64,000 bases of DNA from NCBI GenBank assembly GCA_964035545.1, contig OZ037771.1:15657289-15721288 (forward strand), in the 5' to 3' direction. Position numbers and translations under genes: made by a program. The stretch comes from Bugula neritina. Taxonomy: Eukaryota > Animalia > Bryozoa. Below, one piece after another: positions 18,001-21,000 of the stretch (positions within the stretch are counted from its first letter, which is position 1; each line of letters begins with the position of its first letter). The notes under the pieces were generated by a model. The model searched no databases. It worked only from the letters and a program-made list of their open reading frames with translations, and was not told the DNA's origin.

Positions 18001-21000
18001 TTGTAGGCAAGTTGGATGGAGAGTATAACAGGTGGAGTACTCAGGTATGTATCATCATATAGTATATCATTATATAGTATAGTATATCACCATATAGTAT
18101 AATATATCATCATATAGTATAGTATATCATCATATAGTATAGTATATCATCATATAGTATAGTATATCATCATATAGTATAGTATATCATTATATAGTAT
18201 AGTATATCATCATATAGTATAGTATATCATCATATAGTATAGTATATCATCATATAGTATAGTATATCATTATATAATCTAATATAATATATGATATATA
18301 ATATGATATATACTCATCTGATACTGTATATCTATTTTGTAGGTCGGGGAGTTGTCTTCCCTACTAAAAGAGCTGCCAATGAAGTCTCTACTAGCGTCTG
18401 CTTTCATCACATACATGCCGGCAGCTCCAGAGGATGTGAGGCAGGAGAGACTCAAGTCCTGGATGGAGCTGACCGGGGTTCAAACCTTCAATCTGCGCCG
18501 ATTTATGAGTACTGAGAGCGAGCAGTTAATCTGGAAAGGTCAAGGACTACCATCGGATGACCTCAGCATGGAGAATGCTCTGATAATTCTGCAGGTACAC
18601 AGGCTAAACTTGTGTTAGCTCAGTAACCCTGCCTTACCGTGTGCTAATAATTCATGTCATGTACAGCCTACTAACAGCTACACCTCATGTCTACATGCTG
18701 CTTGTTCTGTTTAATCTAGATTAACCAATGCTCAGTTGGGGTAAGACAGCTACTTTATATACACTATTGATATACTCAAACTATACACACAGTATACTGT
18801 ATATACACTGCTGATATACTTAGAGTATATACACAGTATACTGTATATACACTGTTGATATACTCAAAGTATATACACAGTATACTGTATATACACTATT
18901 GATATACTCAAAGTATATACACAGTATACTGTATATACACTGTTGATATACTCAAAGTATATACACAGTATACTGTATATACACTATTGATATACTCAAA
19001 GTATATACACAGTATACTGTATATACACTGTTGATATACTCAAAGTATATACACAGTATACTGTATATACACTATTGATATACTCAAAGTATATACACAG
19101 TATACTGTATATACACTGTTGATATACTCAAAGTATATACACAGTATACTGTATATACACTATTGATATACTCAAAGTATATACACAGTATACTGTATAT
19201 ACACTATTGATATACTCAAAGTATATACACAGTATACTGTATATACACTGTAGTCTCATTAGTCAATTAGTGTGATTGGCTGCTTTATTTCTTTATTTTC
19301 ACATTTTCACAACTCCATGTGAAAACTCAGGTTTTGCCACACTTTCTGTAGACGGAGATGTTGTGTATATACGTTATGTAATGCGTGATATCTATGTTCT
19401 GCTGTTACATGATACGTGTGTTTTATGTGTTTCACAGTGTTTGTAGTTATATATACAATACAAGGCGTATATTACCCATCATATATATGTGTTACACAGT
19501 GTTTGTAGTTATATATACAATACAAGGCGTATATTACCCATCATATATATGTGTTACACAGTGTTAGTAGTTATTTATACAATACAAGGCGTATATTACC
19601 CATCATATATATGTGTTACACAGTGTTTGTAGTTATATATACAATACAAGGCGTATATTACCCACCATATATGTGTTATGCAGTATTAGTTATCATATAT
19701 ATTATTTAGTTTAGTGGTATGCTTACGCTACACATGCTTTACTTCTTAGTGTGAGTGATTTGTAGAGTTAGTTCATCTCCATCATAAACAGTGATTTTAT
19801 TATGATTGCGGACTGTTTATAGACCGCCCTCAGACCTTATCTTGTGGACCCAAGTTCTCGGGCTACAGAGTGGCTGAAGGTTCATTTGAAAGAGCAGAAG
19901 TTGGAAGTTGTAAACCAGCAGGTTAGACATGATGATAATATACTGTATTATATGATAATATACTGTATTATATGATAATATACTGTATTATATGATAACA
20001 TACTGTATTATACGATAATATACTGTATTATATGATATTATACTGTATTATACGATAACATACTGTATTATACGATAGTATACTGTATTATACGATAGTA
20101 TACCGTATTATACTGTATGTTGACAGGATGCTAATTTCACTACTAGTGTGGAACTGGCTGTAAGATTTGGCAAGACTCTCATCATACAGGAAATGGATAC
20201 AATTGAACCAATTCTCTATCCTCTGCTCCGAGGTGACCTCATCAGGTGGGATTATCTCCTCTTCTATCAAAGTTATATTTACTCTGTGGCTCAGTATACT
20301 GTTCTAGTATATAATATACTGTTCTAGTATGATGTGCTGTATATAGTATTGTGGTATGTACTGTATATAGTATTGTGGTATGTACTGTATATAGTATTGT
20401 GGTATGTACTGTATGTAATATTATGGTATGTACTGTATGTAATATTATGGTATGTACTGTATATAATATTATGGTATGTACTGTATATAATATTATGGTA
20501 TGTACTGTATATAATATTATGGTATGTACTGTATATAATATTATGGTATGTACTGTATATAATATTATGGTATATACTGTATATAATATTATGGTATGTA
20601 CTGTATATAATATTATGGTATGTACTGTATATAATATTGTGGTATGTACTGTATATAATATTATGGTATGTACTGTATATAATATTATGGTATGTACTGT
20701 ATATAATATTATGGTATGTACTGTATATAATATTATGGTATGTACTGTATATAGTATTATGGTATGTACTGTATGTAATATTATGGTATATACTGTATAT
20801 AATATTATAGTATGTATTGTATATAATATTGTGGTATATACTGTATATAATATTGTGGTATGTACTGTATATAATATTGTGGTATGTACTGTATATAATA
20901 TTATGGTATGTACTGTATATAATATTATGGTATGTACTGTATATAATATTATGGTATGTACTGTATATAATATTATGGTATGTACTGTATATAGTATTAT

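What the first reader, a model, noticed from the sequence alone, without database searches (positions are those of the whole stretch)
18595..18745. Hidden 21-nt DYNC2H1 microexon at the position of the vertebrate microexon
Seen: the only repeat-free stretch after exon ...ENALIILQ has TACTAAC, a TGCTGC-containing pyrimidine tract, TAG, then ATT AAC CAA TGC TCA GTT GGG (INQCSVG) and GTAAGA. Recalled and needing verification: human DYNC2H1 has an alternative 21-nt, retina-enriched microexon (IIGLKSW) right after the equivalent ILQ, and SRRM3/4-regulated microexons carry upstream UGC motifs. Inference: a microexon conserved in position and length in an invertebrate, whose regulatory intron has been protected from satellite expansion.
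Basis: partly seen in the sequence, partly recalled or inferred. Interest (0 to 1): 0.8.

Follow-up and report, generated by a model that had tools for sequence, protein, structure and literature searches.

The report
Ancient dynein-2 microexon in a bryozoan
A 21-base optional exon sits in this bryozoan's ciliary dynein-2 motor gene at the spot of the human retina-specific, disease-linked microexon, and the same cassette is present in nine of ten distant invertebrate lineages examined, so it is probably as old as bilaterian animals, though no RNA could be examined here.

Summary
Exon 18343-18594 ends in ...ENALIILQ in phase 0. A stop-free 21-nt cassette (18720-18740, INQCSVG) follows, with TACTAAC, a TGCTGC-bearing pyrimidine tract, TAG and GTAAGA. 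The next exon starts at 19823. It is not the only repeat-free stretch: the intron has three.

I began at about 70% for a chance pseudo-exon. Comparative data reversed that. One fixed rule (AG, 21 in-frame stop-free nt, GTAAG) gives exactly one hit in the orthologous intron of 9 of 10 independent non-vertebrate lineages, three of them tested prospectively. Background is 0.04 hits per kb. The peptides form a family (INDLKPG, INPLRPG, INPLQPG, SNDLPPG, TSDLPPG, IHDIPVG, LNDFEAG, INACDAQ). They share I-N-x-L with the 7-residue inserts in teleost proteins (INALKLR and variants), and I-x-x-L with the mammalian IIGLKSW, at the same junction.

The human microexon maps to the same intron: Q3273 ends the upstream exon and Ser3279 lies inside the microexon.

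Caveats:
- No RNA evidence.
- A cryptic sibling species lacks the whole cassette through a clean 76-nt gap.
- The bryozoan peptides depart from the consensus.
- UGC motifs are not enriched across species.

The parts
18343..18594 (+). DYNC2H1 exon A, 84 codons, ends ...ENALIILQ, phase 0; end of the stalk return and first ~20 residues of AAA5 (Pfam AAA_9)
   Evidence: the exon boundary ILQ|GT is kept in about 70 genomic fragments from other animals
18669..18675 (+). Branch-point consensus TACTAAC, about 45-50 nt upstream of the cassette's 3' splice site; a 40-nt AG-free zone follows it
18696..18701 (+). Tandem UGC motifs (TGCTGC) at -24 and -21 from the cassette
   Evidence: motif role taken from PMC9303857 and PMC8797185
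18697..18719 (+). Pyrimidine-rich tract and 3' splice site TAG
   Evidence: 15 of the 20 bases before the AG are pyrimidines
18720..18740 (+). 21-nt microexon, INQCSVG, phase 0 to 0
   Evidence: orthologous cassettes in 8 other non-vertebrate lineages
18741..18746 (+). 5' splice site GTAAGA (GGG|GTAAG is shared by 8 of the 9 lineages)
18667..18742 (+). 76-nt segment (branch point, tract, AG, microexon, GT) that is absent from the sibling-species contig L001
18751..19249 (.). 44-nt satellite, 11.3 copies, starting 10 nt after the cassette's 5' splice site
19424..19676 (.). 62-nt tandem repeat, 4.1 copies
19823..19921 (+). DYNC2H1 exon B, 33 codons, [12 protein letters not shown]...NQQ; beta-1 strand and degenerate P-loop region of AAA5

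Best explanation
18720-18740 is a genuine, frame-preserving 21-nt cassette exon of the dynein-2 heavy chain gene and is orthologous to the vertebrate DYNC2H1 microexon (human exon 64). When it is included, the splices 18594>18720 and 18740>19823 insert seven residues (INQCSVG). The insert lies between the first helix of AAA5 (...ENALIILQ) and its beta-1 strand, lengthening a surface loop at the entry to the AAA5 core. In a fold of a natural teleost segment that carries its own insert, the first residues extend the helix and the rest form a low-confidence loop. Shown: the sequence anatomy, the conservation of position, phase, length and splice sites, and an I-N-x-L...G peptide pattern across distant invertebrates and vertebrates. 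Inferred: that the exon is spliced in in this species, that inclusion is optional and cell-type restricted (most gene models of other invertebrates skip it), and that it tunes motor behaviour in specialised cilia. The CUAAC branch point, the 40-nt AG-free zone and the tandem UGC fit the cis code of eMIC (Srrm234)-dependent microexons. That regulator link is inference only.
For: Same intron and phase as the human microexon (PMC7708302). The rule AG+21 nt ORF+GTAAG gives exactly one hit in the orthologous intron of the window, L003/5/6, L009, L010, L012 and L013. It also does so, prospectively, in L015, L016 and L017. Background is 12 hits in 297 kb. The per-intron chance is 0.05-0.28; the joint chance for the eight non-window lineages is about 1e-7. 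The peptides are related: I at position 1 in 6 of 9, N at 2 in 7 of 9, L at 4 in 5 of 9, G at 7 in 8 of 9. Vertebrate inserts show I, N, L at positions 1, 2, 4 in 19, 15 and 15 of 19 types. The lineages are deeply diverged: exon A is 65-79% identical at protein level and 62-73% at nucleotide level, and introns are otherwise unalignable. Teleost models carry 7-residue inserts at this junction in 33 of 117 clusters, and mammal-type proteins carry IIGLKSW. The fold is (helix 140-154, pLDDT below 50 at 156-158, strand 162-166).
Against: The sibling-species contig L001 lacks the whole cassette through a 76-nt gap, although its flanking exons encode identical protein and its exon A differs at 11 synonymous sites in 252 nt. 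The bryozoan peptides depart from the I-N-D/P-L-x-P-G consensus (C for L, V or A for P; Q for G in L003). L003 differs from L005 and L006 by one amino-acid change inside the cassette. Both points hint at relaxed constraint in this clade. No invertebrate protein model with the insert turned up among the 120 listed proteins of the 681-2168 residue search.
Confidence: 0.77

Rival explanations
1. Decaying relic: the cassette is orthologous to the ancient microexon but is no longer spliced in this bryozoan lineage, and it will be lost as it already was in the sibling species.
For: The 76-nt deletion in L001. The bryozoan peptides are the most divergent of the set. There is an amino-acid difference between L003 and L005/L006. 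A satellite abuts the 5' splice site.
Against: Two bryozoan lineages have saturated silent sites (exons about 78-80% identical, introns unalignable). Both still keep the AG, the open 21-nt frame, GTAAG and the I-N start, with synonymous third-position changes in codons 1, 2 and 4. A neutral relic would not keep all of these.
Confidence: 0.16
2. Chance pseudo-exon: an AG...GT frame that happens to look like an exon.
For: The intron holds 40 such frames of 3-51 nt, and a second 21-nt frame. Read alone, the candidate is only about p 0.05.
Against: Exactly one equivalent cassette occurs in 8 further lineages, against 0.04 per kb background, with related peptides.
Confidence: 0.03
3. A conserved intronic element that is not coding, for example a decoy or recursive splice site that helps removal of a long intron.
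For: The strong 5' splice site GTAAG is the best-conserved part. The intron position of the cassette varies from 125 nt to 7.3 kb from exon A.
Against: The fixed 21-nt length, the absence of stops in the one relevant frame in all nine lineages, and amino-acid-level conservation with synonymous changes. The vertebrate orthologue is translated, and a stop codon in it causes retinal disease (PMC7708302).
Confidence: 0.04

Closest known systems
Human/vertebrate DYNC2H1 retina-predominant microexon (exon 64 of NM_001080463; VastDB HsaEX0021304)
   Same: Same gene. Same intron, after the Q of ...ILQ, phase 0. Same 21-nt length. Isoleucine first, and N second as in teleosts. Location about 20 residues into AAA5 (PMC7708302, PMC9303857).
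   Different: Residues 3-7 differ (INQCSVG against IIGLKSW or INALKLR). Tissue pattern and regulator are unknown here. The literature treats it as a vertebrate retinal microexon, and PMC9303857 lists it as not conserved in zebrafish. An invertebrate counterpart is not mentioned in any of the 8 papers that hold both terms.
eMIC (SRRM3/4, invertebrate Srrm234)-dependent neural microexons
   Same: Length of 27 nt or less, frame-preserving, UGC close to the 3' splice site, strong CUAAY branch point and a long AG-free zone, as described for fly eMIC exons (PMC8797185).
   Different: Dependence was not tested. UGC is not enriched across the ten orthologous cassettes. An eMIC-type match in this genome stays below the Pfam cut-off and is RS-rich low complexity.
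The few microexons at equivalent positions in flies and mammals (four exons, PMC8797185)
   Same: It would be another case of a microexon position kept across protostomes and deuterostomes.
   Different: Here peptide residues are kept as well as the position, and the gene is a ciliary motor rather than a neuronal excitability gene.

Membership tests
Orthologue of the vertebrate DYNC2H1 AAA5 microexon | Lies in the intron that follows the exon ending ...ILQ (human Q3273), phase 0 | tested here: met
   Ser3279 inside the human microexon (PMC7708302); ILQ-IIGLKSW in P0405 and P0406
Orthologue of the vertebrate DYNC2H1 AAA5 microexon | 21 nt, stop-free, frame-preserving, flanked by AG and GT | tested here: met
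Orthologue of the vertebrate DYNC2H1 AAA5 microexon | Recognisable sequence relationship of the encoded peptide | tested here: met
   I-N start shared with teleosts and with 5 other invertebrate lineages, and G7 shared with 7 others. Position 4 is C instead of L. The link runs through intermediates such as INDLKPG (L015) against INALKLR.
Orthologue of the vertebrate DYNC2H1 AAA5 microexon | Included in mature mRNA | not testable with these tools
All listed runs are kept as contigs only.
Orthologue of the vertebrate DYNC2H1 AAA5 microexon | Photoreceptor or retina-type restricted inclusion | not tested
   No stage- or tissue-resolved RNA was available.
eMIC/SRRM-dependent microexon | UGC motifs within about 40 nt upstream of the 3' splice site | tested here: met
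   TGCTGC at -24 and -21. Across species only 4 of 10 cassettes have one, so this is not a conserved trait.
eMIC/SRRM-dependent microexon | Genome encodes an Srrm protein with an eMIC domain | tested here: inconclusive
   PF15230 match at G000:C9:3317918-3317998 scores 26 bits (genome search) and 20 bits (ORF scan) against a cut-off of 27, in an RS-rich ORF.
eMIC/SRRM-dependent microexon | Inclusion depends on the eMIC regulator | not testable with these tools
   Needs a knock-down or a minigene experiment.

The most novel reading that the evidence does not exclude
The DYNC2H1 AAA5 microexon is an urbilaterian splice switch, older than about 550 My. It has been kept in position, length and an I-N-x-L core from lophotrochozoans to humans, and it specialises retrograde intraflagellar transport in sensory or photoreceptive cilia. 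In this bryozoan that would be the ciliary photoreceptors of the larval eyespots. The human retinal-disease microexon would then be one of the very few microexons shared by protostomes and deuterostomes. The sibling Bugula lineage with the 76-nt deletion would be a natural knock-out.
Probability: 0.35. Interest if true: 0.85.

Novelty: new member of a known kind. Interest (0 to 1): 0.66.

Why it matters
The human counterpart is a retina-predominant exon, and a stop codon in it causes non-syndromic retinal degeneration (PMC7708302). Its function in the motor is unknown. Comparative work has found almost no microexons at equivalent positions in protostomes and vertebrates: four between fly and mammal (PMC8797185). 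This particular exon was reported as not conserved even in zebrafish (PMC9303857). A cassette kept across annelid-like, bryozoan and other invertebrate genomes dates it to early bilaterians. That points to a conserved mechanical role of the AAA5 entry loop, and it offers tractable invertebrate systems, plus a possible natural deletion, to test what the insert does.

Tried and rejected
1. Read laying.

2. Metagenome pattern scans found nothing. They are uninformative: the second pattern is present in the JGI contigs L001 and L002 and was still not returned, so near-own records are left out of that collection.

3. My first reading, a chance pseudo-exon at about 70%. It rested on the L001 deletion and the zebrafish remark, and the cross-species scan overturned it.

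4. Invertebrate protein models carrying the insert. None was found among the 120 listed hits of 681-2168 residues.

5. eMIC domain in this genome: below cut-off and low complexity.

6. Naming the source species of L009-L017. Only L010 could be placed, nearest to an annelid. A paper search for its assembly accession found nothing.

8. P0405 and P0406 may be human or other mammal proteins. I read only their junction peptide and did not look up their contigs.

Full report
**What is there.** The window carries a dynein-2 heavy chain (DYNC2H1) gene on the + strand.
- Exon A is 18343-18594, 84 codons ending ...ENALIILQ. Exon B is 19823-19921, 33 codons starting [12 protein letters not shown].
- They match human dynein-2 in PDB entries 4rh7, 6rla and 6sc2 at E 1e-25 and 3e-9. 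The two matches are contiguous in the short human isoform.
- One detail is wrong. The intron has three repeat-free stretches, not one. The arrays are a 44-nt satellite at 18751-19249 and a 62-nt repeat at 19424-19676.

**Recalled facts.**
- PMC7708302 describes a 21-bp, in-frame, retina-predominant human microexon (exon 64 of NM_001080463) in AAA5. A homozygous stop at Ser3279 within it causes non-syndromic retinal degeneration.
- In the tagged PDB chain the Q of ILQ is residue 3479 of 4513. With a 206-residue tag (my inference, from 4513 minus 4307) that is Q3273, so residues 3274-3280 are the microexon.
- Two mammal-type proteins returned by a search read ILQ-IIGLKSW-S.VCPF. They may be human, so I read only that peptide and looked up nothing more.
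- PMC9303857 confirms UGC binding by the eMIC domain of SRRM3/4 and an RT-PCR response of the DYNC2H1 microexon. It also states that this microexon is not conserved in zebrafish.

**Chance.**
- The intron holds 40 AG..GT stop-free frames of 3-51 nt, and a second 21-nt one at 19352-19372.
- Candidates with an equally good pyrimidine tract and 5' splice site number 4 in 128 kb of window strands, or about 0.04 per intron of this size.
- Alone the candidate is only suggestive.

**First comparative result, against.**
- A JGI metagenome contig (L001) carries both flanking exons and the whole orthologous intron. Its protein is identical, and exon A is 241/252 nt identical with all changes synonymous, which marks a cryptic sibling species rather than an allele.
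- Its intron aligns at about 93% up to 18666 and resumes at 18743.
- The 76 nt in between are simply absent: branch point, tract, AG, microexon and GT.
- At this point I held a chance pseudo-exon as most likely.

**Second comparative result, for.**
- A more distant relative is represented by contigs L003-L006 from bryozoan-labelled metagenomes. Its exons are 91-97% identical at protein level and about 78-80% at nucleotide level, and its introns are unalignable.
- It has its own 21-nt cassette in the same intron, with CAG and GTAAG: INACDAQ in L003, INACDPQ in L005 and L006.
- Codons 1, 2 and 4 encode the same residues as in the window through synonymous third-position differences.

**Vertebrates.** A region search with a sea-bass protein returned 117 readable fish-dominated clusters. 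Of these, 33 carry a 7-residue insert directly after ILQ: INALKLR, INELKLR, INTLKLQ and variants. Two carry 5-residue versions. The microexon therefore begins I-N in teleosts as well.

**Test of a fixed rule.**
- The rule is AG, 21 nt with no stop in the exon frame, then GTAAG.
- It was scored on the orthologous intron of every further animal contig I could fetch through exon-A fragments.
- Exactly one hit came up in each of L009 (TSDLPPG), L010 (INPLRPG; exon A nearest to an annelid), L012 (SNDLPPG) and L013 (LNDFEAG). L014, a 708-nt intron, had none.
- Background in all other sequence of these loci, both strands, is 12 hits in 297 kb, and none of those peptides resembles the family.
- With the rule frozen I then fetched three new loci. 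Each gave exactly one hit: L015 INDLKPG, L016 INPLQPG, L017 IHDIPVG.
- The per-intron chance is 0.05-0.28. The joint chance over the eight non-window lineages is near 1e-7, before counting peptide similarity.
- Column counts: I at position 1 in 6 of 9, N at 2 in 7 of 9, D at 3 in 5 of 9, L at 4 in 5 of 9, P at 6 in 5 of 9, G at 7 in 8 of 9. Vertebrate inserts share I1, N2 and L4.
- The lineages are far apart: exon A is 65-79% identical in protein.

**Conclusion on identity.**
- The cassette is an ancient, orthologous microexon.
- It is optional. Invertebrate models with names, from a crinoid and from the annelid Lamellibrachia, skip it, as do 97 of the 101 junctions I could read among the 120 listed proteins of 681-2168 residues; three carry vertebrate-type inserts. 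The annelid-like genome L010 nevertheless holds the cassette.

**How it probably works.**
- Pfam places the junction about 20 residues into AAA_9, the AAA5 region, just after the stalk.
- I folded a natural teleost segment that contains its insert (71-row alignment, mean pLDDT 87). The helix runs through ...ILQ and the first insert residues, to 154. A low-confidence loop follows at 155-161. Then comes beta-1 of the AAA5 core, at 162-166.
- The insert therefore lengthens the helix-to-strand loop at the entry of AAA5. What that does to the motor is not known.
- The window's cis features fit the code described for eMIC-dependent exons in flies: CUAAC at -49, a 40-nt AG-free zone, and two UGC at -24 and -21 (PMC8797185).
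- UGC occurs in only 4 of 10 cassettes, about the chance rate.
- The only SRRM_C match in this genome is sub-threshold and RS-rich. The regulator remains an inference.

**What is missing.**
- There is no RNA evidence. The run search listed 15 holders, all kept as contigs.
I worked beside those places and sent none of their letters to any search tool afterwards.
- The two metagenome pattern scans are uninformative.

**Weighing.**
- The sibling's deletion and the off-consensus bryozoan peptides leave room for a relic that is no longer used: about 0.16.
- Chance is about 0.03 and a non-coding conserved element about 0.04.
- A working optional microexon is about 0.77.
- That the cassette is orthologous to the vertebrate microexon I put above 0.9.

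**Earlier notes.** Other agents' notes on this genome name it Bugula neritina and mention a second cryptic species. These are unchecked notes, but they agree with the sibling-type contig L001 seen here.

Noticed in passing
window 18667-18742 against L001 592-598: A clean 76-nt gap in a cryptic sibling species removes the whole microexon cassette right where the 44-nt satellite begins. It may be a natural knock-out, or a by-product of satellite turnover.
   Followed up: partly
window 18751-19249: Each unit of the 44-nt satellite carries a CAG|TATACT|GTATAT frame, a 6-nt frame-preserving pseudo-exon. That gives about 11 decoy AG..GT pairs inside the intron.
   Followed up: no
L003 2811-3083 (also L004-L006): In the more distant bryozoan-type relative, exon A is split by an extra intron at about codon 45. 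The window lacks that intron, so there has been intron gain or loss between related species.
   Followed up: no
P0268, P0303: Two fish models carry 5-residue inserts (INEFK, INTLK) instead of 7 at the same junction. These may be a 15-nt variant of the microexon or an alternative 5' splice site.
   Followed up: no
P0083, P0335-P0400: Many unnamed contigs encode 1200-1340 residues of dynein-2 in one uninterrupted ORF across this junction. These lineages have no intron here and therefore no room for the microexon.
   Followed up: no
window 19352-19372: A second 21-nt AG..GT stop-free frame (TEMLCIY) with a good pyrimidine tract but a weak GTTATG donor. It has no counterpart elsewhere and I take it as chance.
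   Followed up: partly
G000:C9:3317918-3317998 (L008 1480-1683): An RS-rich ORF with a sub-threshold SRRM_C match (20-26 bits, cut-off 27). It could be the C-terminal exon of an Srrm234-type gene, or plain low complexity.
   Followed up: partly
window 18172-18207: This part of the 20-nt AT-rich satellite in the upstream intron tripped the read tool's filter.
   Followed up: no
window 18595-18600: The donor of exon A is GTACAC, which is weak next to the cassette's own GTAAGA.
   Followed up: no
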